Positions 3,241 through 62,933 of a stretch of 64,000 nt of DNA are shown here, piece after piece. The position numbers were made by a program, and so were the translations under genes. The stretch spans positions 1 to 64,000 of the forward strand of contig NIVC01000127.1 of assembly GCA_002269645.1 (NCBI GenBank), given 5' to 3'. The notes under the pieces are model-generated. The model made no database searches. It was not told where the DNA came from and saw nothing but the letters and a program-made list of their open reading frames with translations. The first letter of the stretch is position 1; each line of letters begins with the position of its first letter. Source of the stretch: Macrostomum lignano. Taxonomy: Eukaryota.

Positions 3241-6096
3241 ATGGCTGACAACTTAGCAGTCCAAGATATAGAGAAATTGGATGTGAGCAAGCTCACCCCG
3301 CTAACTCCCGAGGTGATTAGCCGTCAGGCCACAATCAATATCGGCACCATTGGTCACGTGGCCCACGGCAAGACCACAGTGGTGAAGGCCATCTCCGGCG
3401 TGCACACAATCCGGCACAAGAACGAACTGGTCCGCAACATCACCATTAAGCTGGGCTACGCTAATGCAAAATCTACCGCTGCGACAATCAGCTGTGCCCT
3501 AAGCCCGGCTGCTATCGGAGCAAAGGCTCCGCACATCCGGACGACTTTCCCTGCGACCGGCCCGGCTGTTCCGGCCGGTTCCGGGTGCAACGCCACGTCT
3601 CCTTTGTTGACTGTCCCGGCCACGACATCCTCATGGCTACCATGCTGAACGGAGCCGCCGTTATGGACGCCGCTTTGCTGCTAATCGCTGGCAACGAGGC
3701 CTGTCCGCAGCCTCAGACCTCCGAGCACCTGGCCGCCGTTGAAATTATGCGACTGCGTCATCTGCTGATTTTGCAAAATAAAATCGATCTGATTAAAGAG
3801 CAGGAGGCCCAGAATCAGTATGAGGCTATTTTGGACTTCATCAAGGGCACCGTGGCTGACGGCAGCCCCGTGGTGCCGATCTCCGCCCAGCTTGGCTACA
3901 ACATCGACGTGGTGTGCGAGTACATCTGCCGCCACGTGCCCGTGCCGCTGCGCGATTTCACTAGCGACCCCAGGCTTATCGTTATTCGCAGTTTCGATGT
4001 TAATAAGCCAGGTTGGTTAGTTTCTTATCTGATTGCTGATTCTTTCACAGCCTCCCAGATCCTCAGTTGCTGGGCCACCCTCTCAGATCCTCAGTTGCTG
4101 GGCCAGCCTCCCAGATCCTCAGTTGCTGGGCCACCCTCTCAGATCCTCAGTTGCTGGGCCAGCCTCCCAGATCCTCAGTTGCTTGGCCAGCCTCCCAAAT
4201 CCTCAGTTGCTTGGCCAGCCTCCCAGATCCTCAGTTGCTTGGCCAGACTCCCAGATCCTCAGTTGCTGAGCCAGCCTCCCAGATCCTCAGTTGCTGAGCC
4301 AGCCTCCCAGATCCTCAGTTGCTGGGCCAGCCTCTCAGATCCTCAGTTGCTGAACCAGACTTCCAGATCCTCAGTTGCTGAACCAGACTTCCAGATCCTC
4401 AGTTGCTGAACCAGACTTCCAGATCCTCAGTTGCTGGGCCAGACTCCCAGACTCACGAGATCCCTCCACATCTTGGGGAATACTTTTACATTAGCTATCA
4501 GTTTTTAATTTTTTATGCTTTAAAATAATTAGAAATGTTCATCATATCCTTCCCGGACTGAGTAGTTAGCCAAGCGCATGCTAATATAAAATCATTTACG
4601 TCAATCCAGGCTCGGAAGTTGACGATTTAAAAGGTGGCGTAGCCGGCGGCTCCGTCCTTCGCGGCGTCCTTCGCGTTGGCCAGGAGATCGAAGTCCGGCC
4701 GGGCATCATCTCCAAGGGCGCCGAGGGCCGCATGACCTGCCGGCCGATCCTGTCCCGAATCGTGTCGCTGTACACCGAGCGCAACGATTTGCAGTTCGCC
4801 GTTCCCGGCGGCCTGATCGGAGTTGGCACCATGGTTGATCCCACTCTGTGCCGGGCCGATCGCATGATTGGCATGGTTCTAGGCGCTGTTGGCACTTTGC
4901 CAAGCATCTACATCGAACTGGAGATCAGCTTCTTTCTGTTGCGCCGGCTGCTTGGCGTTCGAACCGAGGGTGACAAGAAAGGCGCCAAGGTTTGTTGGGG
5001 TGGTCTGTGACAGGGTTGCCAACAACAGGTTGATTTGCCTGAACCCAGGATTGTTTAGGTTTATTTAGCTTTGTTTACCAGCACCTGGATTTTTAGGTTT
5101 ATTTAGTTTGGGCTACCAGCACCTAGATTTTTAGGTTTATTTAGTTTGGGTAACCAGTACCTATATTTTTAGGTTTATTTAGTTTGGGTAACCAGTACCT
5201 ATATTTTTAGGTTTATTTAGTTTGGGCTTCCAGCACCTGGATTTTTAGGTTGATTTAGTTTGGGTAACCAGTACCTAGATTTTTAGGTTTCTTTTGGGTT
5301 ACCAGCACTTAGATTTTTTAGGTTTATTTAGTTTGGGTTACCATCACCCATTTTCAAAGTTTTACTTAGGTTGGCTTACCAGTAATCAGTTTGTTTAGGT
5401 TTATTTAGGTTGTATTGCCAGTGACCAATATTTTTAGGTTTATTTAGGTTGTATTGCCAGTGACCAATATTTTTAGGTTTATTTTGGTTGTATTGCCAGT
5501 GACCAATATTTTTAGGTTTATTTTGGTTGTATTGCCAGTGACCAATATTTTTAGGTTTATTTAGGTTGTATTGCCAGTGACCAATATTTTTAGGTTTATT
5601 TTGGTTGTATTGCCAGTGACCAATATTTTTAGGTTTATTTAGGTTGTATTGCCAGTGACCAATATTTTTAGGTTTATTTAGGTTGTATTGCTAGTGACGA
5701 ATATTTTTAGGTTTTGTTACCAGAACTCAGATTTTTTAGGTTTATTTAGGTTAGGTTACTAGCACCTAGAGAGTTTAGATTTAGTTAGGTTTTTTGACTT
5801 AGGTGTCCATGTCCATCCACTGTGATTTTTAACGCTTATCTGCCCCCCCCCTAAAAAATGAATCGCAGGTGCAAAAGCTGGCCAAGGCGGAGCTGCTGAT
5901 GGTGAACATTGGCTCCCTGTCCACCGGTTGCCGGGTGATTGCAGTTAAAAACGACCTGGCCCGCATCGCGCTCAACCAGCCAGTGTGCACTGAGATTGGC
6001 GAGAAGATCGCCCTGTCGCGCCGCGTTGACAAGCACTGGAGGCTGATCGGCTGGGGTCAGATTAGAAAGGGCTCGCCTATTAAAGTTGTGGAATGA
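3241..6096 (+). CDS. EIF2S3: Eukaryotic translation initiation factor 2 subunit gamma; exons 3241-4011, 4610-4989, 5869-6096; apparent 1-nt deletion at about 3467-3471
   Basis: [16 protein letters not shown]-loop, [33 protein letters not shown]|[22 protein letters not shown]|VQKLAK...WRLIGWGQI. Introns 4012-4609 and 4990-5868 are GT-AG and phase-compatible. Confidence 0.95.
4049..4450. repeat. Minisatellite (about 28-bp unit CCAGATCCTCAGTTGCTGGGCCAGCCTC) in eIF2-gamma intron 1
   Basis: Tandem degenerate copies visible. Confidence 0.9.
5050..5800. repeat. Minisatellite (about 39-bp unit TATTTTTAGGTTTATTTAGGTTGTATTGCCAGTGACCAA) in eIF2-gamma intron 2
   Basis: Tandem copies; homogeneous core at 5400-5700, degenerate flanks. 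Confidence 0.9.
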
Positions 6097-10254: not shown

Positions 10255-10860
10255 TCCTTTCTCTCTCTATCTCTCTCCCTTCTCTCTCTATCTCTCCCCT
10301 CCCTTCTCTCTCTATCTCTCTCCCTTCTCTCTCTATCTCTCCCCTCCCTTCTCTCTCTATCTCTCTCCCTTCTCTCTCTATCTCTCCCCTCCCTTCTCTC
10401 TCTATCTCTCTCCCTTCTCTCTCTATCTCTCCCCTCCCTTCTCTCTCTATCTCTCCCCTCCCTTCTCTCTCTATCTCTCTCCTCCCTTCTCTCTCTATCT
10501 CTCTCCTCCCTTCTCTCTCATCTCTCCCCTCCCTTCTCACTCTTCCCTTCTCTCTCCTCCCTTCTCTCTCCTCCCTTCTCTCTCCTCCCTTCTCTCTCTT
10601 CCCTTCTCTCTCTTCCCTTCTCTCTCTATCTCTCTCCTCCCTTGTCTCTCCTCCCTTCTCTCTCCTCCCTTCTCTCTCCCTTGTCTCTCCTCCCTTCTCT
10701 CTCCTCCCTTGTCTCTCCTCCCTTCTCTCTCCTCCCTTGTCTCTCCTCCCTTCTCTCACTATTTTCTCCCCATCTCTCCTTTCTCGGTCTCTCCTTTCTT
10801 CTCTCTACGTCTCTCCCTTCTCTCCCTTCTCTTTCATTCTCTTTCCCATATTTCTCGCTT
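10255..10860. repeat. CT-rich compound micro/minisatellite
   Basis: CCTTCTCTCTCTATCTCTC-type units. Confidence 0.9.
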
Positions 10861-11389
10861 CTTTACTGTTTGCCCTCACATTGTATCCTTTTCCCTCTTC
10901 ATCTCACCGCTCTCCCGTCTACCTGGTTCCCGCGGACGCGAGAGCACATGCTGGCACGCACGTGGCCTATTTATCCTCATCGGATTCGCACCGACCAGCT
11001 GCAAATTTGCTTCCACACGGTGCCGCTAGGCCTATAAGCTGTACGAGTATTCCGATTCCCTTTCATCACCATCCGACTTTCTAGTATAGAAAAATTCATG
11101 TGCCCACGGAGCCGTGACGAACTGCGGGGCAACTCACTATTAATCTATAATCCCGCCCCCCATCCAATGTACTCTATAATTATAAGAAGGCTAAAAATAC
11201 TGAAGTATAAGTTAGAAAGATCACATGCACCATTGAACACTTGCATTAGGCTGTCTCGTGTGAGCGTAGGCGTTGTATATTTGTCATAACAGAATCTTTC
11301 TTAAAATTAAATTTAGTAGACGCTTCTTTAGGATAGACGGCTGGGCAGAAACATTGTCAAGAAGGAATTTCTTCCCAAAATTTAATGGG

Positions 11390-12260
11390 TTGAGAAACGG
11401 TCAGTGGGGAATTTCTTCCCCCCGGGTTTAAATATGGTTGGAGAAACGGTCAGTGGGGAATTTCTTCCCCGGGTTTAAATATGGTTGGAGAAACGGTCAG
11501 TGGGGAATTTCTTCCCCGGGTTTAAATATGGTTGGAGAAACGGTCAGTGGGGAATTTCTTACCCGGTTTTAAATATGGTTGGAGAAACGGTCAGTGGGGA
11601 ATTTCTTACCCGGTTTTAAATATGGTTGAAGAAACGGTCAGTGGGGAATTTCTCTCCAGGGTTTAAATATGGGTGGAGAAACGGTCAGTGGGGAATTTCT
11701 TCCCCGGGTTTAAATATGGCTGGAGAAACGGTCAGTGGGGAATTTCTTCCCCGGGTTTAAATATGGCTGGAGAAACGGTCAGTGGGGAATTTCTTCCCCG
11801 GGTTTAAATATGGCTTGAGAAACGGTCAGTGGGGAATTTTTCTCCCGGGTTTAAATATTGATTGAGAAACGGTCAGTGGGGAATTTCTCTCTCGGGTTTA
11901 AATATGGTTGGAGAAACGGTCAGTGGGGAATTTCTTCCCCGGGTTTAAATATGGCTGGAGAAACGGTCAGTGGGGAATTTCTTCCCCGGGTTTAAATATT
12001 GATTGAGAAACGGTCAGTGGGGAATTTCTCTCCCGGGTTTAAATATTGATTGAGAAACGGTCAGTGGGGAATTTCTCTCCCGGGTTTAAATATTGATTGA
12101 GAAACGGTCAGTGGGGAATTTCTTACCCGGGTTTAAATATGGTTGGAGAAACGGTCAGTGGGGAATTTCTTCCCCGGGTTTAAATATGGCTGGAGAAACG
12201 GTCACTGGGGAATTTCTTCCCCGGGTTTAAATATGGGTTGAGAAACGGTCAGTGGGGAAT
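11390..12260. repeat. 47-bp minisatellite GGAGAAACGGTCAGTGGGGAATTTCTTCCCCGGGTTTAAATATGGTT
   Basis: About 18 tandem units; internal GGGGAA...TTCCCC palindrome in each unit. Confidence 0.95.
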
Positions 12261-12756
12261 GAGTCTGGGGATAAATATAGGTGAAGAAATACTCAGTGGA
12301 GGGAATTTATTCCCCGATTAAGAACTCTACGTGAGAAACTCGACCAGTTTGTTTTCCAGTTTCCAGGAAAGACTGTCCCTCTTCATTTTTAAAACGCTCC
12401 CTGGCTAAAGCGCGTGCAGTGCCCTTGTTTCAATTCTTCGCTCAAGGCTTGCCCGGTTGCAGCTGGTTTTTCCTGGAATCGAGCCGCGGATCCTCCTCTA
12501 GATCAGCCTCTTGAGATTCCGTCGAACCCTCTGTACTAGCAAATTTGCCCATGTCATGATGAACTCTTCAGCCCACGCCCAGCCTCTGCTGGTGGAGCGC
12601 GTCCCCCACCCGGGCAGGGTCCGACGCAGGCGAGCGGAAGTAATTTGTATCTGCATGTTCCAATTCGAAAGTAATAGGAAAAATTTATTGTTATTACTCG
12701 TAGTCTGTTTGACCGACACACCCTTCTTACTGATCTGAATCAGGGTTCATGATTCA

Positions 12757-13455
12757 TCCCAAACTGCACCCCAAACTGCACGCCAAATTGCACCCCAAAC
12801 TGCACCCCAAACTGCACCCCAAACTGCACCCCAAACTGCACCCCAAACTGCACCTCAAAGAGCACGCCAAACTGCACGCCAAACTGCACCCCGAACTGCA
12901 CCCCAAACTGCACGCCAAACTGCACCCCGAACTGCACCCCAAATTGCACTCCAAACTGCACCCCAAACTGCACGCCAAACTGCACCCCAAACTGCACCCC
13001 AAACTGCACCCGAAACTGCACCCCAAACTGCACGCCAAACTGCACCCCAAACTGCACTCCAAACTGCACCCCAAACTGCACCTCAAAGAGCACCCCAAAC
13101 TGCACCCCAAACTGCACCCGAAACTGCACCCCAAACTGCACCCCAAACTGCACCCCAAACTGCACCCCAAACTGCACCTCAAAGAGCACCCCAAACTGCA
13201 CCCCAAACTGCACCCCAAACTGCACCCCAAACTGCACCCCAAACTGCACCCCAAACTGCACCCCAAACTGCACCCCAAACTGCACCTCAAAGAGCACCCC
13301 AAACTGCACCCCAAACTGCACGCCAAACTGCACCCCGAACTGCACCCCAAACTGCACTCCAAACTGCACCCCAAACTGCACGCCAAACTGCACTCCAAAC
13401 TGCACCCCAAACTGCACCCCAAACTGCACCCCAAACTGCACGCCAAACTGCACCC
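12757..13455. repeat. 12-bp minisatellite CCAAACTGCACC
   Basis: About 58 units with recurring variants (CTCAAAGAGCAC). Confidence 0.95.
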
Positions 13456-14214
13456 AGTTGACTAATGCCATAATTATATGTTGCGATTAAAACTGTTGTG
13501 AAATCCCTATTGCAGCCGTCTCTGCATTTTGCCTGAAATTTTCCCAACTCTAGCGATTAAAACTCCGCTCTAATCGCTGCTTATCGGCACTTGTCTTTTG
13601 AGGTAAATTGCGGAAATTGCTGGGGATGCGTCTTCAAAGAGCAGAAAAAGCGAAGTTTAAAAAGTGTTGAAGAAAAGTTGCTCCCGGCGGCAGCTGCGCT
13701 AACGGCAAAGCCTGGCTGCTCAAAAAAGCAGGAAAACCTGTTTGATCAACCAGACAAGCCAACCCCAAGACTCCAACTGCTCCGGCCTCTGCCCGCCGAT
13801 GCACCGTAAGGATGTGGCGGATAAACAAGCCAATTAAATGGGCGGCCGGGGGCTGCAGCACACCGAAGTCAGTCAGCTGCTGTAGCTGGCAGACCAAGCC
13901 AAGACGCGGTGCAGCCATCACCGCCAGCTATGATAGTCATAAATCATGCCCATGCAAGAGTGCGAAGCACTTCATCGGATGCATGACTAGCATTGTTGCA
14001 GCTATATTTTCAATCGCTGCTGTATGGGGGGCTATGCAGGTAAACCAACACTGCTAATTTAAAAAAGACTGATTGAACTGCGTGAAGAGTGGTGTCCCTG
14101 ATACAAGCACAAAATTAAAGTGGCATCAGTGGCGTCCTGACGCGGACAATAAAAAGTGACGCCGAAAAACAAGGAACCACCGACACAGATAAATAAATGG
14201 CACTACTATCACCG

Positions 14215-14515
14215 AAACACAAAATAATGGCACTCCTGACACCAAAACAAAATAGTGGCACTCCTGACACCAAAACAAAATAGTGGCACTCCTGACGCCA
14301 AAACAAAATAGTGGCACTCCTGACACCAAAACAAAATAATGGCACTCCTGACACCAAAACAAAATAGTGGCACTCCTGACGCTGATACAAAAGTGGCACT
14401 CCTGCCATTGAAAAGTGACACCAAATTTCGACACAGACACAGTGGCACTCCTGACGATGACACAGTGGCGCTCCTGGCGATGACACAAAAGTGGCACTCC
14501 TGACACAGACAAAAG
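14215..14515. repeat. 28-bp minisatellite CACCAAAACAAAATAGTGGCACTCCTGA
   Basis: About 7 clean units, then degenerate copies. Confidence 0.85.
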
Positions 14516-14739
14516 ATGACACCCCTGACGCCGACTAAGGCGCGTCTGCGACGCGCTGTCAGCCATGCACCCACCTCGTGATCTGCCATCTGCCGCTCTG
14601 TAAAGAGGTGACAAAGAGCCGCTCCGCGCGACAATCGCTGCGGCCGCTTTTGGAGTGGCCAGCAAAACCTGGCAGATCTGTGCAGCAAATCGCCGAACGC
14701 ACCTGCCCTCCCCCCCCTGTCCCACCCCAAAATCCAGTC

Positions 14740-14746
14740 TATAAAT
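14740..14746 (+). promoter_or_regulatory. Candidate TATA box of the insulin-like peptide gene
   Basis: TATAAAT about 125 bp upstream of the split start codon; positional inference only. Confidence 0.35.
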
Positions 14747-14867
14747 TCGGCAACAGACAGCGGCCTAAACGGCAGCTCTCTCAGCTCGATCCTCCAGCTT
14801 CTCCTGCCCGACACTGCCGAATCGCTTCCCTATAATTGATTCAATAGGAAATCCCCTGCTAAGCAAA

Positions 14868-15663
14868 ATGTAAGTCAATGATTTTCGAATCACGTTTTTT
14901 CAAAAAAGCACCAAACAGTTTGTCCAATACAATCTAATCGTCACCTGCCCCCCCCCCTCACCGCCGCAGGAGTTCGACACTTGTGACTGTCGTTTGCACA
15001 GGAAAAAGCTGCAGTCTCGGTGGCGGTCGGCTGCCACTGCTGCTGCTGCTGCTCGCCCTGTCAGCTGGGGCGGCCATGGCCGAGGACGCCCGCAGGGTCA
15101 GCCGAGCCGTTGGTCCGTTCGACAGCTACGAAGAGGTCAGTCGTGAGAGCAGCTGGCAGCCCCATGCGTTGCATACAATTTTATCCGATGCCGCATCGCT
15201 AAAAGACCCGCATGACTTTTTTCCAGATTAGCTTGTCGCCAAACTCAAAGATTTACAAGGCGTGCGGTTTGCCGCTGATGATCCTGATGACTCGCGCCTG
15301 CAGGCGTCACGGCGGACTCTACGTGCCGGCTAAGGACCCGGTGCTGGAGGAGTTCGGCAGTCTGTCCAAAAGTGAGTTGCTCTGCTCAGCCGCCCCCCCC
15401 CCTGAAAAACTCCCTAATGCCGCCGATGCATCGTAATTTGAGAATCGAAAATTTCCATTGCAGCCACGAAAATGCCCCCCGTCGGAGCCGGAGGCGTCAG
15501 GAACCCCTGCAACAGACCCGACATCGGGCAGCGCGACCCGTTCCTCCAGTGCTGCTGCAACTACTGCTCGGAGAGGACACTGCGCGGCTTTTGCTCTGAC
15601 GACGCGCGCCACGCCTCCCAGCAGCTTTTCCTGATGGCCCGGCCGGGCAAGAGGTCCAATTAA
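14868..15663 (+). CDS. Insulin-like peptide precursor (170 aa); exons 14868-14869, 14970-15135, 15227-15371, 15464-15663
   Basis: Spliced ORF of 513 nt: signal-like LPLLLLLLALSAGAAMA, B-chain CGLPLMILMTRAC (C-x11-C), A-chain CCCNYCSERTLRGFC (CC-x3-C-x8-C). All three introns are GT-AG with matching phases. Confidence 0.85.
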
Positions 15664-24358: not shown

Positions 24359-27300
24359 TTGGCATATTCATCCTGCCCCACCGAAAGCCGGCAGGCTGCC
24401 TGCATCAGCCAGGCGGCGTCATCAGAGCGCTGGCAATGGCACCAGCAGCAGCGGCTCCGGCATCAGCAACCATTGCTGCTGAATCGCGCGCAGCATCCAA
24501 TACAGTCGCAGCTGGCATCTGTACTGCTGATCCGTGGCCTGCACTCGAGCTGCTGTCATCGCACTGGCGATGAGATCAAAAACAAGCCGCCGCCGCCGGC
24601 TTCGCCGCCAGCAAAGACGCAGTCGCAGCCGCCGACGGCTCGGCCGTCACTGCCTGCCCGAATCTGGCACGAGATTCTGCACTATTGGAACGGCTTCCGC
24701 CTGCTAGCCTTGGAGACTCGGATCGCCCTGCGAATCAGCTTGAAGTACATGCGCGGCGCCACCATCTCTAGACGGGAGCGGCGCCACTTGGTTCGCACAG
24801 TGGCCGACTTGTTCAGAATGGTGCCCTTCTTGTTCTTCATTGTAATCCCGTTCATGGAGTTCCTGCTGCCATTCTATCTTAAATTCATGCCATTCATGCT
24901 GCCGAGCACGTTCAAGGAGAAGGACAAGGAGGCTGAGAAGTTGCGCATTAAGCTCAAGGCCAAGCTGGAGACGGCCAAGTTTCTGCAGGAGACTCTTTAT
25001 GAAGGCTTTCAAGCGAAGACTACGGTAAAGCGAGCAGGGCTTGCCACTCTTATAGATTGTCCGGAACCCCATCGTCACTCATACTCTTGGTCACAGCCCC
25101 CAATCACAGTCACCAGTCACAACCCCCAGTCAGTCCCACAATCACAGTCCCCAGTCACAGGCCCCTATCACAGTCCCCAGTCACAGGCCCCTATCACAGT
25201 CCCCAGTCACAAGCCCCTATCACAGTCCCCAGTCACAGGCCCCTATCACAGTCCCCAGTCACAGGCCCCTATCACAGTCCCCAGTCACAGGCCCCTATCA
25301 CAGTCCCCAGTCACAGGCCCCTATCACAGTCCCCAGTCACAGGCCCCTATCACAGTCCCCAGTCACAGGCCCCTATCACAGTCCCCAATCACAGCCCCCA
25401 ATCACAGTCACCTATCACAGTCCCCAGTCACAGGCCCCTATCACAGTCCCCAGTCACAGGCCCCTATCACAGTCCCCAGTCACAGGCCCCTATCACAGTC
25501 CCCAGTCACAGGCCCCTATCACAGTCCCCAGTCACAGGCCCCTATCACAATCCCCAGTCACAGGCCCCTATCACAGTCCCCAGTCACAGCCCCCAATCAC
25601 AGTCACCTATCACAGTCCCCAGTCGCAGTCTTCAGTCCCAGTTTACAGTCACAGTCACACCTTCCGTCACAATACTTAGTTCCAGTAATAGTCCCAGTAA
25701 TGATTCTCAGTGACCGTCCATCACAGCCCCAGTCACAGTCCTAGTCCTCAGTCACTGTCAGTCACAGCCCCAGTCACAGTCCTAGTCCTCAGTCACTGTC
25801 AGTCACAGTCCTAGTCCTCAGTCACTGTCAGTCACAGTCCTAGTCCTCAGTCACTGTCAGTCACAGTCCTAGTCCTCAGTCACTGTCAGTCACAGTCCTA
25901 GTCCTCAGTCACTGTCAGTCACAGTCCTAGTCCTCAGTCACTGTCAGTCACAGCCAGTCACAGCCCCAGTCACAGTCCTAGTCCTCAGTCACTGTCAGTC
26001 ACAGTCCTAGTCCTCAGTCACTGTCAGTCACAGTCCTAGTCCTCAGTCACTGTCAGTCACAGCCCCAGTCACAGTCCTAGTCCTCAGTCACTGTCAGTCA
26101 CAGCCCCAGTCACAGTCCTAGTCCTCAGTCACTGTCAGTCACAGCCCCAGTCACAGTCCTAGTCCTCAGTCACTGTCAGTCACAGTCCTAGTCCTCAGTC
26201 ACAACCAGTAAAACCCCAACTGTCGCCCAACCAGGACAAGTCCAATCGCGAAGCCCTGGCCGATTTTCGCCGCTTCATGCAAAAGTGCACAACGGCGAGT
26301 CGCTATGCAACTACAGACGAGCTGCTGCGCTTCTCCGCCCTATTTGCTGACGAGTTGACGCTCGACAATCTCGAACGGCCACAGCTGATGGCCATCTGCA
26401 AACTGTTGGACATGGCCGCCGTCGGGTCCAAAGCCATGATCCTGCTGCAGCTGGAGCTGCGGCTCCGTCAGCTGCACACTGACGATTTGATGATTCGCGA
26501 CGAGGGCGTCGACCGACTGAACGTGACGGAGTTGCAGGCCGCCTGTCGGGCCCGCGGCATGCCGGCTCTGGGCGTGTCCGAGGATCGGCTGAGGGAGCAG
26601 CTGAGCCAGTGGCTTGATCTGCACCTGGTGCACAGCGTGCCGGTCTCCCTGCTGCTGCTGTCCAGGCTGCTGCACTTCCCCGACAGTGTCGATGCAGAGG
26701 AGAGGCTGCGCAAGGTGATTGGCAGCCTGCCAGAGCAGGCGATTCGCTCCGCCGAGGCGTCCAGCTCCGAGGCCGACAGCCGCACCCGATTGGAGGCGTT
26801 GAAGAGCCGTGACCGGGCAATCCGCTCCGAGGAGGCCGAGATTAAGAAGACGCAGAAGCAGAAGAAAAAGCATCAACAGGAAGAGGTGGCGGATGTGCTC
26901 ACGACTACTGACTCTGCCGAGAGGCTGCGCGATCCGGCCGAGGCGGCTGGAGCGACCACTGGCCGGTCAGCGACAGCCGCCGGCGACGCCGCGTCTGACG
27001 GAGCCGACATTGACGTCGGCGCCGCGGATCTACAAGCGCTAGAGTCGGCCATCGACGAGGTGTCGGCAAAAGCGCTGGACGAGGAGGAGATTCGCGAACT
27101 GAAGGAGGAGCTGAGCGAGTACTTCAGCGGCCTGGCCGACGCCCCCATCGTCGGCGACGTCAGAAGGGAGCGAAGCAAGGAAGAGAAACGGGTGGGTGAT
27201 GCTTTTGGGCTCTGGAGTGACCCGGAGTGACCTTTTAGGCTCTGGATTGACCCGGAGTGACCTTTTAGGCTCTGGATTGACCCGGAGTGACCTTTTAGGC

Positions 27301-31385: not shown

Positions 31386-33748
31386 CTACAGCTCCACTTT
31401 TGGCTCGGGCATCTGCTGATCCGTCTCCAACTCCGAATGGTTGTATCCGGGCGGTTTCTCCTCCTGTTGCTGCTCCTGCGGCTTAATCACAATTACCTGG
31501 TTCCGCTTGCGGTCGGCTAGCTTCTTGTGCACCAGCAGCGCGCCGTACATTGCCAGTTCCAGGATCTCAACTAGCGTCACGATTGATGCACCGATCCATA
31601 GGCCTGAGAGAATTGATTGCTAATTGTTTTGTATTCAATTTGTGGAATTGGCGCTCAGTGGCTTCTGTCTAGCTGTAATTATAACCTCCAAATAGTAACA
31701 ATATCAATCTTGAAAGGTGCGCAACAAAAAGTTTTCTCCAGTATTCTTAAACTTTAAACTACATAAAGGTATTTTATAATGAAGGAGAAAGGCGTTTTGG
31801 TGTTTTTTCATTACCTAAAATTCCGCCCAAATCCGAAAAGAAATTTCTCAGCGGATAGGCCCAACTCTCGATGCTCATTTGCACGATCAGGTCCCTTGGG
31901 TACAGATCTAGAACTCCGGCGTAATATTTGACGCGACTTTCGTAGTTGCTGACCAGATCTTTGAGTCCCCGCACGTCCAAGCCCCTCGCCTTGGCCTCGT
32001 TCAGCGCTTCCGTGGCCAGATTGGACACCGCCTTGCCAGAATATTTCACGCTGTTCGGCCACTGGTAGTAGCGAGGCATCACTTCGTGCGATTTGACCCG
32101 GCACAGCACCGGGCAGCCGTGGGTGTCCACTCCCTCTCTGTTCTGCCTGTCCAGCACTCTCTGATAGCAGTCCAGGCGGGCGATGGTGCCGTTGTACATG
32201 TCGTAGTTGGTGGCGACATAATCCATCAGAGGGTATTTGTACCAGCTGTCGTTGCGGATAGTGTAGTAGGTGTAGCTCGACGTTGGCCTTCTGTAAAAGA
32301 TGTCCCGAAACAAGACGTGCTCGTTGATGTCGTGACAGACGCCTGGCTGCGCCATGTAGTACAGGTCGGCCGGCTTGGGCAGATGAGTGGCCAGGCAGCC
32401 GCAGGTGTCCAAGTACTCTTGCTGCATGATGCGCACGCGGCAGTCTTCGGTGCTGCCACGGAAGGTTTCATTCTCTGGCCCAGTCAGCTGGCTGTAGTCG
32501 GTGATGTAGGTTGCGTTGGGCAGGCTCTCCAGGCATCGATAGCTGCTCCGGTCGACTTTTTCCTGTATGGAAGTGTCAATCACCGCCTCGGTTTTGTACT
32601 TGAGCGGCGACATCACGTGCGGTCCGTTCATGTTTGGCTTCACGCCTGTTGTAAATTGGGGTGAGGTGGTTAGATTATCCGGTTGGTTTTGTGTAGAGAA
32701 ACCGGCTTGCAAACCAGCATGCCTTACGCACCTCTTGGATGCAGCACCACCTTCATTCCTGGTATATCGTCGATCTCCTCTTCGTCAGTAAAGAATGACG
32801 AACTGTATGTGTACATGAGCAGATAAAGTCCGTTGCCGGGCCCGGCACTGACCACCGTATTGTTAAGCGGCGCGAACGTCATGCACTTAAACAGCTCGTC
32901 GTCCTTGTAGATGGTGAAATTCAAATAACTGCAGGGAATCGAGTTGAATCGGCAGAGCAGGACAATCTCGTACGGGTCAGGTAGTTGTTTTGACCTTAAA
33001 TTTTTAATGAAAACAGCGATCTAAATACTAAGTGATTACGCATTAATGGGCACCATGTAAAGGTGTTTCTTTACAATGTAAGTGCAGTTTTAACAGTCTT
33101 CAACGGTAATCTTAATTCATTTTGACATCCGGTTTCTAAGACGTACAAAGATTATTGTCCAACTGTCACTAGATTTTGGTGAGCCAGCGACGATGCATCC
33201 ACGCATAGCGGCCTGACTCTGCCTCACCTGTATGCGATCTTGTTTAGAGCCAGTTTACCGTGCCGATAGCTGCTGTATGGATTCACCGGCACGCTAGCGT
33301 TCATGTCCGTTTGGTTGAGCAGGTGAAAGAACCGGGACACGTCGTAGATCATGTCCACCAGGCCGCGCGCTCGACCCGGCACTGCCACGGGGCTTGGCAC
33401 CGGGTCATAGCCGTAGGTGACGCTCAGATAGTTCGTCGAACAGATGGTCACGTCGGGAAATTCGAAGAAGTCCGTGCGAGCCTCCAGCTCTGTGCTAACC
33501 GGATAGGAGGTGTACTGCTGCACCAGCATGCTGAGGTGCAGGATGAAGCCTACGCACACTCCGACGACCACCAGGGCCCAGAGGACGCGCTGGACTCCAG
33601 AGCCCTGGCTCAGTCGGAAGATGCCGTGGCTGCTGGCCAGCTGCTGCTGCTGCTTCGTCGGCTGCTGATCCTCGATGCTGTCCTCGTTCCCGAAAGCCGC
33701 TTGCGCTGTGCGAACATCGGGCCTCGAGTTTATCGCCGAGCGTAGCAT
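31386..33748 (-). CDS. DEG/ENaC (amiloride-sensitive) channel subunit, about 610 aa; exons 33748-33228, 32994-32732, 32645-31815, 31603-31386
   Basis: SSHG motif, TM1 VLWALVVVGVCVGFILHLSML, FEFPDVTIC, thumb cysteines (EDCRVR...CGC...), TM2 FFSDLGGILG|LWIGASIVTLVEIL with the GAS filter; phases are consistent. Confidence 0.92.
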
Positions 33749-34577
33749 AGTTACGCAATTCAGAGACTGTTGCGCACTTAGCCTGTGATGGGTTAACCCG
33801 CTGGAATCCAATGGGGCAATCTGGGACCATTTGATCTCGGCCTACCAGCTAAATACTTTCTCAAATGTTTGCCGGTGTTGCCAAGACGACCAGCTCCAAT
33901 CTAAACGATAGCTGAATGCAACAACAACTTGTCAATCAAAAAGCTGTTCGCAAAGAAATTTGAAGTTTCGTTTGACACCTGATCTCTATGAATTACGATT
34001 TTAGAGGTTTTATATCCAACCGAAGAGCCAAACTTTATGAATCAGTTTCAGTGGCTGTTCTTTAGCTCTTTGCTTTGAACAGAATCTATTCACCACAGGT
34101 TCTTTGAACTGTTGCTGGCATTCGATCTTTAGTCAAAGTTTGCCACCTCTTTGAAATCAAAGACTGATCTATCTGACTTTGTGCTAGCAGTTCTTTTATT
34201 ACAAAGGACTTCATGGCGCATCTCGAGACAATAATGCTCTGATTATTGAATCAGCTTGATGAAAATCAAAAAATAGATTTTTTTGAAATTTTACGAGTGG
34301 AGGGGTGTTTCAAAAGTACTGAGAATTTTTTCATAACTCTTGAATTGAACTTTTTAACTTGAAATGGGAAAAGTTGCCAATTCTTAACAAGATTGCTTAT
34401 GAGTTTTATGTAGAAGATAATGCATGGTTTTTAGGGTTGTATTTCTTTAAATCCCGGAGAGCTCGAGTAATTTAAGTTAATACATGTACAACCCGTAAAA
34501 TCCATGCATTACCTCAATTAAATCCCTGCTTTCAAACTCCGGGATGTATTCAGATACAACCCGCAAAACAGTTTGAA

Positions 34578-44603: not shown

Positions 44604-47600
44604 CTATAGTAATTGGCTGGACTCCAGCTGCTCATAGGTGATTAATCTCGGGAATTCCTTGTACGCATCGAACGTTGGCATTCGCTGCTTGTGGTAGCCG
44701 AGGTGCGTGAACTGGTGAATGGCCACCGTCCTGTTTGTTATGAAGAGTTCGTCGCTTTTCTCAAAGCCCATCTGCTGCAGTTGAAGGCACACTCGCTGGC
44801 TTGGTGAGAGCCCTCCGGAGTGCCTTTGGAGACGTGGCGCCACTGCGGAGTGAGAGTGCGTTGGACTGTGCTTGCGAATGGCTAGATTAGCAATCCATTC
44901 TATTCCTTTATCCATGTAGGCTAGATTAGCAATCCATTCTATTCCTTTACCCAATGTAAGCTAGATTAGCAATCCATTCTATTCCTTTAATCATGTAGGC
45001 TAGATTAGCAATCCATTCTATTCCTTTATCCATGTAGGCTAGATTAGCAATCCATTCTATTCCTTTACCCAATGTAAGCTAGATTAGCAATCCATTCTAT
45101 TCCTTTATCTATGTAGGCTAGATTAGCAATCCATTCTATTCCTTTATCTAATGTAGGCTAGATTAGCAATCCATTCTATTCCTTTATTCATGTAGGCTAG
45201 ATTAGCAATCCATTCTATTCCTTTAACAAATTTAAGCTAGATTAGCAATCCATTCTATTCCTTTAATAATGTAGGCTAGATTAGCAATCCATTCTATTCC
45301 TTTATCCATGTAGGCTAGATTAGCAATCCATTCTATTCCTTTATCCATGTAGGCTAGATTAGCAATCCATTCTATTCCTTTACCCAATGTAAGCTAGATT
45401 AGCAATCCATTCTATTCCTTTATCCATGTAGGCTAGATTAGCAATCCATTCTATTCCTTTTTTCATGTAGGCTAGATTAGCAATCCATTCTATTCCTTTA
45501 TCCTATGTAGGCTAGATTAGCAATCCATTCTATTCCTTTATCTAATGTAGGCTAGATTAGCAATCCATTCTATTCCTTTACCCTATGTAGGCAAGATTAG
45601 CAATCCATTTTAATCCTTTATCTATGTAGGCTAGATTAGCAATCCATTCTATTCCTTAATCCGTGTTGGCTAGATTAGCAATCCATTCTATTCCTTAATC
45701 CGTGTTGGCTAGATTAGCAATCCATTCTAATCCTTAATCCGTGTTGGCTAGATTAGCAATCCACTTTATTCCTTTATCCATGTAGGCTAGATTAGCAATC
45801 CATTCTATTCCTTTATCCAATGTAGGCTAGATTAGCAATCCACTCTATTCCTTTATCCAATGTAGGCTAGATTAGCAATCCATTCTATTCCTTTATCCAA
45901 TGTAGGCTAGATTAGCAATCCATTCTAATCCTTTATCCATGTAGGCTAGATTAGCAATCCATTCTATTCCTTTATCCATGTAGGCTAGATTAGCAATCCA
46001 TTCTATTCCTTTATCCTATGTAGGCTAGATTAGCAATCCATTCTAATCCTTTATCCATGTAGGCTAGATTAGCAATCCATTCTATTCCTTTATCTAATGT
46101 AGGCTAGATTAGCAATCCATTCTAATCCTTTATCCATGTAGGCTAGATTAGCAATCCATTCTATTCCTTTATCCATGTAGGCTAGATTAGCAATCCATTC
46201 TATTCCTTTATCCTATGTAGGCTAGATTAGCAATCCATTCTATTCCTTTATCCATGTAGGCTAGATTAGCAATCCATTCTATTCCTTTAATCATGTAGGC
46301 TAGATTAGCAATCCATTCTATTCTTTTATCCAATGTAGGCTAGATTAGCAATCCATTCTATTCCTTTATCCAATGTAGGCTAGATTAGCAATCCATTCTA
46401 TTCCTTTATCCAATGTAGGCTAGATTAGCAATCCATTCTATTCCTTTATCCAATGTAGGCTAGATTAGCAATCCATTCTATTCCTTTATCCAATGTAGGC
46501 TAGATTAGCAATCCATTCTATTCCTTTATCCATGTAGGCTAGATTAGCAATCCATTCTATTCCTTTATCCAATGTAGGCTAGATTAGCAATCCATTCTAT
46601 TCCTTTATCCAATGTAGGCTAGATTAGCAATCCATTCTATTCCTTTATCCATGTAGGCTAGATTAGCAATCCATTCTATTCCTTTATCCACGTAGGCTAG
46701 ATTAGCAATCCATTCTATTCCTTTACCCAATGTAAGCTAGATTAGCAATCCATTCTCGAATTCGAAAGCACCGCATCACTCAGCAAGCAATTTATTCTAA
46801 GAACAACAAGAGAGGCCCCTCACTACTCTTGCAGCGGCCGTAGATGCCGCTCCGCGGGTTAATCTTTGGCGAGAAGTAGGTCTCGTTGAGCATGACAACC
46901 GTCGGGTTAGCTGCGTCCCTCTTCCACAGGTCGAACTGTTTCGTGAGCATTTCCGGGCCCGTAGTGGAGAAAATGGCTGAAACAGGAGTCAGGTGATCGG
47001 GCTTTGCAGAGAAGTTCTGTCCAATAATTCCTGGGAAAAAAACAATTTTGCGACTCACAAACAGGAAAAAGGAAATTCCTTTTAGCCGTGCTCGGTCGGA
47101 ACACGAATCGGATAACTTGGCGAAAGAACGGGTGCCCTGGCGTGCAGCCCATGGCCGAGTTCATGGCTGAGTACTGCCTGCCGTGTAGAAACTGAGTCTG
47201 GTGCCGCCGCTCGCTGTCCAAGAAGCAGCTGTGCGGTGCCAGGCTGGGCAGCAGCGGCGCATGGCAGGTCATGTCTAAGTCCATGTACAGCCCTGTGCAA
47301 GCAGCGGGCGGATGCTGGGAGTTGGCATTCAATATCGGATGAGGGACACCCAACGCTCTCGAATTCATGCAAATTTCAGAGGAAGATGCAGGTCTTTGCC
47401 CAGCCGAAATTCATGTCACACGCTTTGGTCGAGAGGTTTACCAGATAGACTGGCATGCAGTTTTATCCAATAGACTGGCAGTTTTACCCAATGGACTGGC
47501 AGTTTTATCCAATAGACTGGCAGTTTTACCCAATAGACTGGCAGTTTTACCCAATAGACTGGCAGTTTTACCCAATGGACTGGCAGTTTTATCCAATAGA

Positions 47601-50600
47601 CTGGCAGTTTTACCCAATAGACTGGCAGTTTTATCCAATAGACTGGCAGTTTTACCCGATAGACTGGCAGTTTTACCCAATGGACTGGCAGTTTTACCCA
47701 ATAGACTGGCAGTTTTACCCAATAGACTGGCAGTTTTACCCAATAGACTGGCAGTTTTACCCAATAGACTGGCAGTTTTACCCAATAGACTGGCAGTTTT
47801 ACCCAATAGACTGGCAGTTTTACCCAATAGACTGGCAGTTTTACCCAATAGACTGGCAGTTTTACCCAATAGACTGGCAGTTTTACCCAATGGACTGGCA
47901 GTTTTATCCAATAGACTGGCAGTTTTACCCAATGGACTGGCAGTTTTATCCAATAGACTGGCAGTTTTACCCGATAGACTGGCAGTTTTACCCAATAGAC
48001 TGGCAGTTTTACCCAATGGACTGGCAGTTTTACCCAATAGACTGGCAGTTTTACCCAATAGACTGGCAGTTTTACCCAATAGACTGGCAGTTTTACCCAA
48101 TAGACTGGCAGTTTTACCCAATAGACTGGCAGTTTTACCCAATAGACTGGCAGTTTTACCCAATAGACTGGCAGTTTTATCCAATAGACTGGCAGTTTTA
48201 CCCAATGGACTGGCAGTTTTACCCAATAGACTGGCAGTTTTACCCAATAAACTGGCAGTTTTACCCAATAGACTGGCAGTTTTACCCAATAGACTGGCAG
48301 TTTTACCCAATAGACTGGCAGTTTTACCCAATAAACTGGCAGTTTTACCCAATAGACTGGCAGTTTTATCCAATAGACTGGCAGTTTTACCCAATGGACT
48401 GGCAGTTTTACCCAATAGACTGGCAGTTTTACCCAATAAACTGGCAGTTTTACCCAATAGACTGGCAGTTTTACCTAATAGACTGGCAGTTTTACCCAAT
48501 AGACTGGCAGTTTTACCCAATAGACTGGCAGTTTTACCCAATAAACTGGCAGTTTTACCCAATAGACTGGCAGTTTTACCTAATAGACTGGCAGTTTTAC
48601 CCAATAGACTGGCAGTTTTACCCAATGGACTGGCAGTTTTACCCGATAGACTGGCAGTTTTACCCAATAGACTGGCAGTTTTACCCAATAAACTGGCAGT
48701 TTTACCCAATAAACTGGCAGTTTTACCCAATAGACTGGCAGTTTTACCTAATAGACTGGCAGTTTTACCCAATAGACTGGCAGTTTTACCCAATAGACTG
48801 GCAGTTTTACCCGATAGACTGGCAGTTTTACCCAATAGACTGGCAGTTTTACCCAATAAACTGGCAGTTTTACCCAATAGACTGGCAGTTTTACCCAATA
48901 GACTGGCAGTTTTACCCAATAGACTGGCAGTTTTACCCGATAGACTGGCAGTTTTACCCAATAGACTGGCAGTTTTACCCAATAAACTGGCAGTTTTACC
49001 CAATAAACTGGCAGTTTTACCCAATAGACTGGCAGTTTTACCTAATAGACTGGCAGTTTTACCCAATAGACTGGCAGTTTTACCTAATAGACTGGCAGTT
49101 TTACCCAATAGACTGGCAGTTTTACCCAATAGACTGGCAGTTTTACCCAATAGACTGGCAGTTTTACCCAATAGACTGGCAGTTTTACCCGATAGACTGG
49201 CAGTTTTACCCAATAGACTGGCAGTTTTACCCAATAAACTGGCAGTTTTACCCAATAAACTGGCAGTTTTACCCAATAGACTGGCAGTTTTACCCAATAG
49301 ACTGGCAGTTTTATCCAATAGACTGGCAGTTTTACCCAATAGACTGGCAGTTTTACCCAATAGACTGGCAGTTTTACCCAATAGACTGGCAGTTTTACCC
49401 AATAGACTGGCAGTTTTACCCAATAGACTGGCAGTTTTACCCAATAGACTGGCAGTTTTACCCAATAGACTGGCAGTTTTATCCAATAGACTGGCAGTTT
49501 TACCCAATGGACTGGCAGTTTTACCCAATGGACTGGCAGTTTTACCCAATAGACTGGCAGTTTTACCCAATAAACTGGTAGTTTTACCCAATAAACTGGC
49601 AGTTTTACCCAATAGACTGGCAGTTTTACCCAATAGACTGGCAGTTTTACCCAATAGACTGGCAGTTTTACCCAATAGACTGGCAGTTTTACCGAATAGA
49701 CTGGCAGTTTTACCCAGATGAACTGATGAACTTTTGAGTATTTGGCAAAACTTGCCACTTCTGACTTACTCTATTGATTTTCGCTGGCCCTGAGCCTAAC
49801 CTGTACTGGCCTGCTCAATTTTGTACACTCCACCCACCATCCCATTCATTGTTGCTTGAGGCGCTCTCACACTCTCACAAGCCATAAATTTTTCACAGCA
49901 TCCACCACCCTCTCCGGTGTTGAGAATGCGACAGCACTTCATCTGTGAATGCCCCGCCTTTCCTCAGGACAGGCTCACCTACCTCCGCCCAAACCCGGAC
50001 CTCTCCAACGTTTTCAGGCCACCTCGTCCGCTACCTGAGGGCTACCGGGCGAGCGACCACCCACCTCCTTGACTCTCCGGAAGGGGGCCCGCGCTGTGGA
50101 CACCGGCACCACTGGATCACCCTTCGCGGCACCGCAACCACAAGCTCTGTGGTCGCCAGGGGTTAGCGGAATTGGTGACAACGCCTTCCCGCTGTATCCG
50201 GATGCCCGAAGCCCCCTGCAGCTGAGTCAAGTAAGTCACCAGCTCACAGCACCCACCACCCCACAGAACCCCTCACCCCACAGCACCCATCACCCCACAG
50301 CACCCACCACCCCACAGCACCCATCACCCCACAGCACCCACCACCCCACAGCACCCACCACCCACAGCACCCATCACCCCACAGCACCCACCACCCCACA
50401 GCACCCACCATCCAACAGCACCCACCACCCTACAGCACCCACCACCCAACAGCACCCACCACCCCACAGCACCCACCACCCCACAGCACCCATCACCCCA
50501 CAGCACCCACCGCCATACATAGGAGCCACAACGCCACAGAACCCCAACCACCCCAAAGCACCCACCACTCATAGCACCGACACAACCGTCACATAACACA

Positions 50601-55006: not shown

Positions 55007-62933
<7,927 letters not shown>

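What the first reader, a model, noticed from the sequence alone, without database searches (positions are those of the whole stretch)
14868..15663. Hidden insulin-like peptide gene with an extra cysteine pair, IGF-like organisation and a possible amidated tail
Seen: four exons scattered over different ORF-track entries splice into signal peptide, N-terminal extension (EDARR...), B chain (C-x11-C), short linker, A chain and C-terminal extension. The mature region has 8 Cys: the canonical six plus a third Cys in CCCNYC and one 13 residues upstream (RNPC), which suggests a fourth disulfide within the A-chain region. No dibasic site precedes the A chain, and the tail ends ...LMARP-GKR-SN, a standard amidation/cleavage signal. 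Established: extra disulfides occur in molluscan and nematode ILPs, usually linking B and A chains. Inference: a divergent, possibly single-chain ILP subtype that may release a second amidated peptide.
Basis: partly seen in the sequence, partly recalled or inferred. Interest (0 to 1): 0.7.

Follow-up and report, generated by a model that had tools for sequence, protein, structure and literature searches.

The report
Ordinary flatworm insulin-like peptide gene
This is a real four-exon insulin-like hormone gene of the flatworm Macrostomum lignano, but it is already in UniProt, and its "extra" cysteine pair is also found in the planarian insulin-like peptide, so it is ordinary.

Summary
Exons 14868-14869, 14970-15135, 15227-15371 and 15464-15663 (+ strand) join through three GT-AG introns of 100, 91 and 92 nt. 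They give a 170-aa secreted precursor with the insulin framework C-x11-C ... CC-x3-C-x8-C plus two further Cys.

The organism is Macrostomum lignano. UniProt already holds the same protein as "IlGF domain-containing protein" (A0A1I8HI28, A0A1I8HS64). Those models read through intron 2 and lack the split start codon.

The novelty claim fails. Planarian Smed-ilp-1 has the same eight-Cys framework (C-x11-C ... C-x10-CCC-x2-C-x8-C, against x13 here). It also has a similar acidic motif after the last Cys. CCCX2CX8C is published as the signature of schistosome insulin-like peptides.

"Short linker / IGF-like" is wrong. There are 52 residues between the B- and A-chain Cys, against 51 in proinsulin and 28 in IGF-1. 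There really is no dibasic site at the C/A junction.

The PGKR tail is present and is kept in one paralogue. It is absent from Smed-ilp-1, and nothing supports release of a separate amidated peptide.

Pfam Insulin is below threshold and the AlphaFold model was inconclusive. A two-flatworm profile hits almost only insulin, IGF and DILP chains in the PDB. Low interest.

The parts
14740..14745 (+). TATAAA box, 128 nt upstream of the start codon; likely core promoter
   Evidence: the only TATA[AT]A in 14600-14870, with no ATG between it and 14868. Its function is inferred.
14868..14869 (+). Coding end of exon 1: the AT of the start codon, in context CAAAAT|GTAAGT. The G comes from exon 2, so this is a phase-2 intron inside the ATG.
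   Evidence: This is the only ATG that puts the signal peptide in frame. P0002 starts at the next codon.
14870..14969 (+). Intron 1 (100 nt, GTAAGT...CCGCAG, C-rich tract)
14970..15135 (+). Exon 2. Residues 1-38 form the signal peptide (h-region LPLLLLLLAL, AMA|E; coding ends at 15081). The N-terminal extension EDARRVSRAVGPFDSYEE follows and contains an RxxR site, RVSR.
   Evidence: Kyte-Doolittle peak 2.3-2.8 at residues 21-33. Identical to the N-terminus of P0002.
15136..15226 (+). Intron 2 (91 nt, phase 0). Read through, it hits a stop at its end in this copy.
   Evidence: The UniProt models read through a 93-nt version of it. It carries the only amino-acid differences between the copies (W/S, L/P, T-run length), while the exons are identical.
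15227..15371 (+). Exon 3. B chain with CGLPLMILMTRAC (Cys69 at 15263-15265, Cys81 at 15299-15301), then RRHGGLYVPAK (the counterpart of insulin GERGFFYTPK) and the first half of the C domain.
15372..15463 (+). Intron 3 (92 nt, phase 1, inside the C domain)
   Evidence: A phase-1 intron in the C domain is characteristic of insulin-family genes (Veenstra 2021). The junction is reproduced in P0001 and P0002.
15464..15663 (+). Exon 4. Rest of the C domain with the extra Cys120 (15508-15510). A chain CCCNYCSERTLRGFC (15550-15594; Cys136 is the second extra Cys). Then the tail SDDARHASQQLFLMARP-GKR-SN (GKR at 15646-15654) and the stop codon at 15661-15663.

Best explanation
This is the Macrostomum lignano member of the flatworm insulin-like peptide family, of the Smed-ilp-1 / schistosome ILP type.

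Shown: the gene structure, the eight-Cys framework, and similarity to insulin-family proteins.

Inferred: a TATA-driven transcript is cis-spliced at three short introns. The first AUG is assembled across intron 1. The 170-aa precursor enters the secretory pathway and loses a 38-residue signal peptide. It folds with the three canonical insulin disulfides. A fourth, flatworm-typical disulfide probably joins the third Cys of CCC (position A8) to the Cys 13 residues upstream in the C domain, pinning that segment to the first A-chain helix. The secreted product would act as a ligand for insulin-receptor-type tyrosine kinases, which control growth, stem cells and gonads in flatworms.

Not determined: whether the 52-residue B-to-A segment is excised, and whether the PGKR end is trimmed and amidated.
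For: - The gene model splices cleanly.
- The start is the only upstream ATG, and a TATA box is present.
- UniProt M. lignano proteins named IlGF domain-containing are identical over all exons and share the exon 3/4 junction.
- The top two PDB hits of the single sequence are proinsulins, aligned from the B chain to the A chain (E 0.2-0.9).
- A profile of this protein plus Smed-ilp-1 gave 61 PDB matches. All but one are insulin, IGF, DILP, bombyxin or relaxin chains, best E 0.0015.
- Smed-ilp-1 passes the Pfam Insulin threshold (24.2 against 23 bits) and has the same framework, C-11-C...C-10-CCC-2-C-8-C.
- The A chain and the motif after it align between the two: QCCCNYCSERTLRGFC-SDDAR here, ECCCKSCTMLNLFKYCPSDDEAR in the planarian (pairwise E 0.004).
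- CCCX(2)CX(8)C is described as the schistosome ILP signature.
- Intron 3 is phase 1 in the C domain, as in insulin genes generally.
- Smed-ilp-1 is expressed in the CNS and testes.
Against: - Pfam Insulin does not reach threshold. The full-length protein gave no hit. The domain alone gave 11.4 bits against a cut-off of 23, although the alignment covers the whole profile.
- The AlphaFold2 single-sequence model is of low confidence (mean pLDDT 47.5) and Foldseek found no insulin match.
- Two sequence searches of billions of proteins found no homologue apart from the M. lignano copies themselves and Smed-ilp-1.
- No transcript or peptide evidence could be reached.
- The disulfide pairing and the receptor are inferred, not shown.
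Confidence: 0.85

Rival explanations
1. One reading: a single-chain, IGF-like hormone. The C domain is never excised, the C-terminus is processed at PGKR to a proline amide, and a second amidated peptide may be released.
For: There is no KR, RR or KK between residue 84 and the A chain. The only dibasic sites are RR42-43 (N-terminal extension), RR82-83 (immediately after Cys81) and KR167-168. GKR is a working amidation signal in planarian prohormones, for example AYRLMRMa.GKR. The PGKRSN tail is kept in paralogue P0002.
Against: The B-to-A Cys spacing is 52, which matches proinsulin (51) and not IGF-1 (28). Smed-ilp-1 has a KK site before its A chain, and the peptide YSPESINCNAY that ends at that site was detected by mass spectrometry, so the family can be cleaved. 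No basic site with a suitable context separates the A chain from the tail, so a separate ...LMARP-amide is unsupported. The tail is absent from Smed-ilp-1 and frameshifted in P0001.
Confidence: 0.2
2. A silent or decaying duplicate. M. lignano carries several near-identical copies, and this one may not be expressed.
For: At least three database copies exist (P0001; P0002 with n=2). P0001 differs from this copy by the equivalent of two 1-nt deletions, which would uncouple the signal peptide and change the tail. No canonical AATAAA lies within 570 nt of the stop. A satellite block lies directly upstream.
Against: This copy has an intact reading frame, consensus splice sites, a TATA box and a good start context (A at -3). 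Its exons are 100% identical in protein to P0002, while intron 2 differs. The P0001 frameshifts could be indel errors of an older long-read assembly.
Confidence: 0.1
3. A chance cysteine pattern, or an unrelated cysteine-rich secreted protein.
For: Pfam is below threshold and no confident fold was obtained.
Against: All six canonical Cys have exact spacing, and CG..L and GxxYxPxK B-chain motifs are present. The hits are specific to the insulin family. The phase-1 C-domain intron is present. The framework matches the planarian ILP.
Confidence: 0.02

Closest known systems
Smed-ilp-1 (Schmidtea mediterranea insulin-like prohormone-1, UniProt E3CTK9; Collins et al. 2010, PMC2953531)
   Same: Signal peptide and a long N-terminal extension before the B chain. 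B chain C-x11-C. An extra Cys (followed by Asn in both) in the C domain, and CCC-x2-C-x8-C. An acidic SDD(E)AR motif directly after the last Cys, and a C-terminal extension.
   Different: The extra Cys lies 10 residues before CCC in the planarian and 13 here. The planarian has a KK site between the extra Cys and the A chain, and a peptide ending at that site was detected by MS; M. lignano has none. The planarian has no GKR tail. Overall identity is about 25%.
Schistosome ILPs (SjILP, SmILP, ShILP; PMC5391603) and cestode EmILP1/2 (PMC3923246)
   Same: The A-chain signature CCCX(2)CX(8)C is described for the schistosome peptides. They are secreted ligands of flatworm insulin receptors.
   Different: The schistosome genes have two exons with an 8-12 kb intron; this gene has four exons with introns of about 95 nt. 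I could not obtain their sequences, so the position of their eighth Cys was not compared.
Vertebrate proinsulin and IGF-1
   Same: The six canonical Cys with identical spacing. A B-chain C-terminal motif GGLYVPAK, against GFFYTPK in insulin. A linker of proinsulin length. A phase-1 intron in the C domain.
   Different: Two extra Cys. No dibasic sites flanking the C domain (unlike proinsulin). A linker twice as long as in IGF-1. A 22-residue tail ending in GKR.
Ambulacrarian octinsulin (Veenstra 2021, PMC8286064)
   Same: An eight-Cys insulin-related peptide predicted to have four disulfides.
   Different: In octinsulin the extra Cys sit after the second B-chain Cys (C-x2-C) and directly after the last A-chain Cys (CC): C-10-C-2-C-44-CC-3-C-8-CC. 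That is a different framework, so this gene is not an octinsulin.
Molluscan MIP-type insulins (including MIP-like cone-snail insulins) and nematode beta-type insulins
   Same: A fourth disulfide added to the insulin core (for the MIP-like type).
   Different: From my own knowledge, not tested here: in those families the extra bond links the B-chain N-terminal region to the A chain. Here both extra Cys lie after the B chain, in the C domain and at A8.

Membership tests
Insulin/IGF/relaxin superfamily | N-terminal signal peptide | tested here: met
   Hydrophobic core at residues 21-33 (KD 2.3-2.8) and AMA|E at -3/-1. Judged by inspection only; no SignalP was available.
Insulin/IGF/relaxin superfamily | B chain C-x11-C and A chain CC-x3-C-x8-C, in that order | tested here: met
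   This is the only such pair in the window.
Insulin/IGF/relaxin superfamily | Pfam PF00049 at or above the gathering score | tested here: not met
   No hit for the full protein. The domain alone scores 11.4 bits, E 0.68, against a cut-off of 23, with the alignment covering profile positions 2-81 of 81. Smed-ilp-1 passes with 24.2 bits. UniProt's name implies a SMART IlGF hit, but that was not rerun here.
Insulin/IGF/relaxin superfamily | Sequence similarity to solved insulin-family structures | tested here: met
   The single sequence puts proinsulins on top at E 0.2-0.9. The profile with Smed-ilp-1 gave 61 matches, all but one from the insulin family, best E 0.0015.
Insulin/IGF/relaxin superfamily | Phase-1 intron in the C domain | tested here: met
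   Intron 3 splits codon 105 after its first base, 24 residues after Cys81. The criterion is from Veenstra 2021.
Insulin/IGF/relaxin superfamily | Insulin fold (B helix, two A helices, three disulfides) | tested here: inconclusive
   AF2 single-sequence model of P0001: mean pLDDT 47.5. Helices fall on the B chain and on both A-chain segments, but Foldseek found no significant hit.
Insulin/IGF/relaxin superfamily | Binds and activates an insulin-receptor tyrosine kinase (or an LGR) | not testable with these tools
   Needs binding or signalling assays.
Flatworm ILP type (Smed-ilp-1 / schistosome ILP) | A-chain signature CCC-x2-C-x8-C | tested here: met
   CCCNYCSERTLRGFC. The signature is described and is present in Smed-ilp-1.
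Flatworm ILP type (Smed-ilp-1 / schistosome ILP) | Eighth Cys in the C domain, shortly before the A chain | tested here: met
   13 residues before CCC here and 10 in Smed-ilp-1, followed by Asn in both. Not checked in schistosomes or cestodes because no sequences were obtainable.
IGF-like single-chain peptides | Short C domain (about 28 residues between the flanking Cys in IGF-1) | tested here: not met
   52 residues, as in proinsulin (51).
IGF-like single-chain peptides | No convertase sites at the B/C and C/A junctions | tested here: met
   The only site in this stretch is RR82-83, directly after Cys81. There is none between residue 84 and the A chain. Actual processing was not tested.
Octinsulin | Extra Cys as C-x2-C after the B chain and CC at the A-chain end | tested here: not met
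   Frameworks compared, using the Acanthaster sequence.
C-terminally amidated secretory peptides | Gly followed by a dibasic site at the processed C-terminus | tested here: met
   ...ARP-G-KR-SN*. Kept in P0002, lost in P0001, absent in Smed-ilp-1. Amidation itself cannot be tested here.

The most novel reading that the evidence does not exclude
The pair formed by the C-domain Cys and Cys A8 may be an ancestral flatworm (Rhabditophora-wide) fourth disulfide that tethers the "C-peptide" region to the A chain. The literature I could read has not treated it as a structural feature: the schistosome paper still counts three disulfides. On this reading, flatworm ILPs never release that segment. The M. 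lignano form lacks every internal dibasic site and carries PGKR, so it would be a single-chain, C-terminally amidated insulin-like hormone.
Probability: 0.2. Interest if true: 0.45.

Novelty: already known. Interest (0 to 1): 0.2.

Why it matters
It matters little beyond curation. The window gives a cleaner gene model than the UniProt entries: the start codon is split by an intron, and intron 2 is removed rather than read through. It also shows that the eight-Cys flatworm ILP framework is present in Macrostomorpha, an early-branching flatworm lineage with good genetic tools. M. lignano would therefore be a convenient system for testing what the fourth disulfide and the unprocessed-looking C domain do. 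None of this changes current views of insulin-family evolution.

Tried and rejected
- Protein searches. The search for homologous proteins with the spliced protein and with the Mlig+Smed profile, and a full HMMER scan of 1.84 billion representatives with P0001, returned only the M. lignano copies and Smed-ilp-1. No schistosome, cestode or other Macrostomum ILPs came back, so a phylogeny could not be built.
I therefore have no paralogue DNA and no transcript contigs.
- Structure. The AlphaFold2 single-sequence model was of low confidence and Foldseek against the PDB gave nothing. Coordinates are not exposed, so Cys-Cys distances could not be measured.
- Octinsulin orthology was considered and rejected on the Cys framework.
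- A start codon donated by a trans-spliced leader at the 14970 acceptor was considered and rejected. An AUG placed directly before exon 2 reads a different frame, which ends at the exon 2/3 junction. This is reasoned from the sequence; the statement that the leader ends in AUG comes from my memory.
- Tandem ILP paralogues in the window: none found.
- Literature searches for a described M. lignano ILP found nothing.

Full report

Yes. The + strand of 14868-15663 holds four coding segments that lie in different frames in the ORF list. Joining 14868-14869, 14970-15135, 15227-15371 and 15464-15663 gives a 513-nt in-frame CDS of 170 aa. The donors are GTAAGT, GTCAGT and GTGAGT. The acceptors are pyrimidine-rich and end in CAG. 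The introns are 100, 91 and 92 nt.

The product is:

MSSTLVTVVCTGKSCSLGGGRLPLLLLLLALSAGAAMA|EDARRVSRAVGPFDSYEE|ISLSPNSKIYKACGLPLMILMTRACRRHGGLYVPAKDPVLEEFGSLSKT|TKMPPVGAGGVRNPCNRPDIGQRDPFLQCCCNYCSERTLRGFCSDDARHASQQLFLMARPGKRSN

The start codon is split: AT comes from exon 1 and G from exon 2. It is the only ATG in the 270 nt upstream, it has A at -3, and it sits 128 nt downstream of the only TATAAA.

A six-frame scan of the whole window finds exactly one CC-x3-C-x8-C. The only nearby CG-x10-C on the same strand lies 250 nt upstream of it. This is not a chance pattern.

**2. What organism, and is the gene "hidden"?**

The spliced protein matches UniProt A0A1I8HS64 of Macrostomum lignano, named "IlGF domain-containing protein" (E 7e-74). 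The other member of its cluster is A0A1I8HI28 (P0002, 200 aa).

P0002 is identical to my model over every exon. It begins at the first full codon after the 14969/14970 acceptor. It uses the same exon 3/4 junction and ends in the same LMARPGKRSN. Its only difference is that intron 2 is read through as 31 codons. In that copy the intron is 93 nt and open. In the window it is 91 nt and ends in a stop. The intron translation also carries the only substitutions between the copies (W/S, L/P). This is what an intron should look like.

P0001 differs by the equivalent of two 1-nt deletions. This is either a decaying paralogue or indel errors in an older assembly.

So the gene is already catalogued and correctly assigned to its family. 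The window only improves the model.

**3. Is it an insulin-family member?**

- The Cys framework is C-11-C-38-C-13-CCC-2-C-8-C. It contains the canonical B chain (CG..L...C) and A chain (CC-x3-C-x8-C).
- After the B chain comes RRHGGLYVPAK. phmmer aligns this with GERGFFYTPK of proinsulin.
- For the single sequence, the top two PDB hits are proinsulins, aligned from the B chain to the A chain, but only at E 0.2-0.9.
- A profile of this protein plus planarian Smed-ilp-1 returned 61 PDB matches. All but one are insulin, IGF, DILP, bombyxin or relaxin, best E 0.0015.
- Intron 3 is a phase-1 intron inside the C domain. Veenstra describes this as characteristic of all insulin genes.

Against membership:

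- Pfam PF00049 is below threshold. The domain alone scores 11.4 bits against a cut-off of 23, although the alignment covers the full profile.
- The AlphaFold2 single-sequence model is of low confidence (pLDDT 47.5) and Foldseek gave no hit, although helices fall on the expected segments.

I take membership as well supported. It rests on the framework, the intron and the profile evidence, not on a curated threshold.

**4. The "extra cysteine pair".**

Smed-ilp-1 was recovered from the supplement of Collins et al. 2010 and from UniProt E3CTK9. Its framework is C-11-C-47-C-10-CCC-2-C-8-C. It has the same third Cys in the CCC, and a Cys (followed by Asn in both species) shortly upstream. The last Cys is followed by PSDDEAR, against SDDAR here.

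The schistosome ILP paper gives CCCX(2)CX(8)C as the A-chain signature of SjILP, SmILP and ShILP. The pattern therefore occurs across flatworm ILPs: the full eight-Cys framework in planarians and the CCC signature in schistosomes.

It is not the octinsulin framework, which is C-10-C-2-C-44-CC-3-C-8-CC. By position it is also not the molluscan MIP type (and my own knowledge).

One point is worth noting. The schistosome paper still speaks of six conserved cysteines and three disulfides. The fourth bond seems to be under-discussed rather than unknown.

**5. "IGF-like organisation" and the tail.**

The linker is not short. There are 52 residues between Cys81 and Cys134, against 51 in human proinsulin and 28 in IGF-1.

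It is true that no KR, RR or KK lies between residue 84 and the A chain. The only dibasic sites are RR42-43 (within an RRVSR furin-like motif in the N-terminal extension), RR82-83 (directly after Cys81) and KR167-168.

Smed-ilp-1 does have a KK before its A chain. Mass spectrometry detected the peptide YSPESINCNAY, which ends at that site. Cleavage is therefore possible in the family. In the planarian, the segment carrying the extra Cys may stay attached only through the disulfide.

For M. lignano, a single-chain product is a fair hypothesis but is untested.

PGKR-SN* is a textbook amidation and cleavage signal, and GKR is used that way in planarian prohormones. However, it is absent from Smed-ilp-1 and frameshifted in P0001. 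Nothing separates the A chain from the tail: AR|H has no basic residue at P4, P6 or P8 (my reading of the sequence). The realistic product is an amidated C-terminal extension of the A chain, not a second peptide.

**6. Mechanism.**

The gene and the framework are shown. The rest is inferred.

The precursor would be secreted and would fold with three canonical disulfides plus a Cys120-Cys136 staple. It would act on insulin-receptor-type kinases. Flatworm ILPs bind flatworm insulin receptors in yeast two-hybrid assays. Smed-ilp-1 is expressed in the CNS and testes.

**7. Context.**

- The gene sits alone, between a 4-kb block of satellites (10255-14504) and an AT-rich stretch.
- Other genes in the window are an EF-Tu-type GTPase, a LETM1-like gene, a DEG/ENaC channel, a QRICH1-like ORF and a retroelement protease.
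- There is no second ILP in the window, no tRNA and no Rfam family.

**8. Verdict.**

The finding is real and correctly modelled, but the gene is an ordinary flatworm ILP that is already catalogued. The held literature describes no M. lignano ILP, so it is uncharacterised, but it is neither new in kind nor structurally unusual for its phylum. Interest 0.2.

Noticed in passing
window 10255-14504: A dense block of unrelated tandem repeats lies directly upstream of the ILP promoter. It contains a CT-rich 24-bp unit x24 (10255-10832), a 47-bp unit x18.6 at 94% identity (11388-12260), the 12-bp unit CCCAAACTGCAC x58 (12758-13455), and 28/23-bp units (14198-14504) that end about 240 nt before the TATA box.
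   Followed up: partly
window 15104-15105 and 15641-15644 (compared with UniProt A0A1I8HS64): One database copy of the same gene differs by the equivalent of two single-base deletions. These would put the signal peptide out of frame and replace the PGKRSN tail with RARGPINKLNNTWQL. It is either a decaying paralogue or assembly indels.
   Followed up: partly
window 15136-15226: Intron 2 is 91 nt with a terminal stop in this copy. In the copies behind the UniProt models it is 93 nt and open, and the gene predictors read through it. The T-run before the acceptor varies in length.
   Followed up: yes
window 24359-25744 and 26277-27230 (+): Two large exons of a LETM1-like gene (Pfam LETM1_RBD, E 1e-27 and 8e-38).
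   Followed up: no
window 31774-32712 and 33224-33811 (-): Exons of a DEG/ENaC (amiloride-sensitive sodium channel, Pfam ASC) gene.
   Followed up: no
window 3241-4409 (+): Exons with an EF-Tu-type GTP-binding domain (a translational GTPase).
   Followed up: no
window 47367-49721: A stretch of about 2.3 kb is open on both strands (784 aa on +, 745 aa on -). It gives only weak hits of the coiled-coil or low-complexity type. It is probably a repetitive coding or satellite-like region.
   Followed up: no
window 56705-57664 (+): An ORF with a retroelement-type aspartyl protease domain (gag-asp_proteas, RVP_2), probably part of an LTR retrotransposon. Neighbouring ORFs at 54-62 kb had no Pfam hit.
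   Followed up: no
Smed-ilp-1 (P0003), residues 97-107: In the planarian orthologue, the segment carrying the extra Cys (YSPESINCNAY) was detected by MS as a separate peptide that ends at a KK site. If the fourth disulfide exists, the planarian hormone could have three chains.
   Followed up: partly
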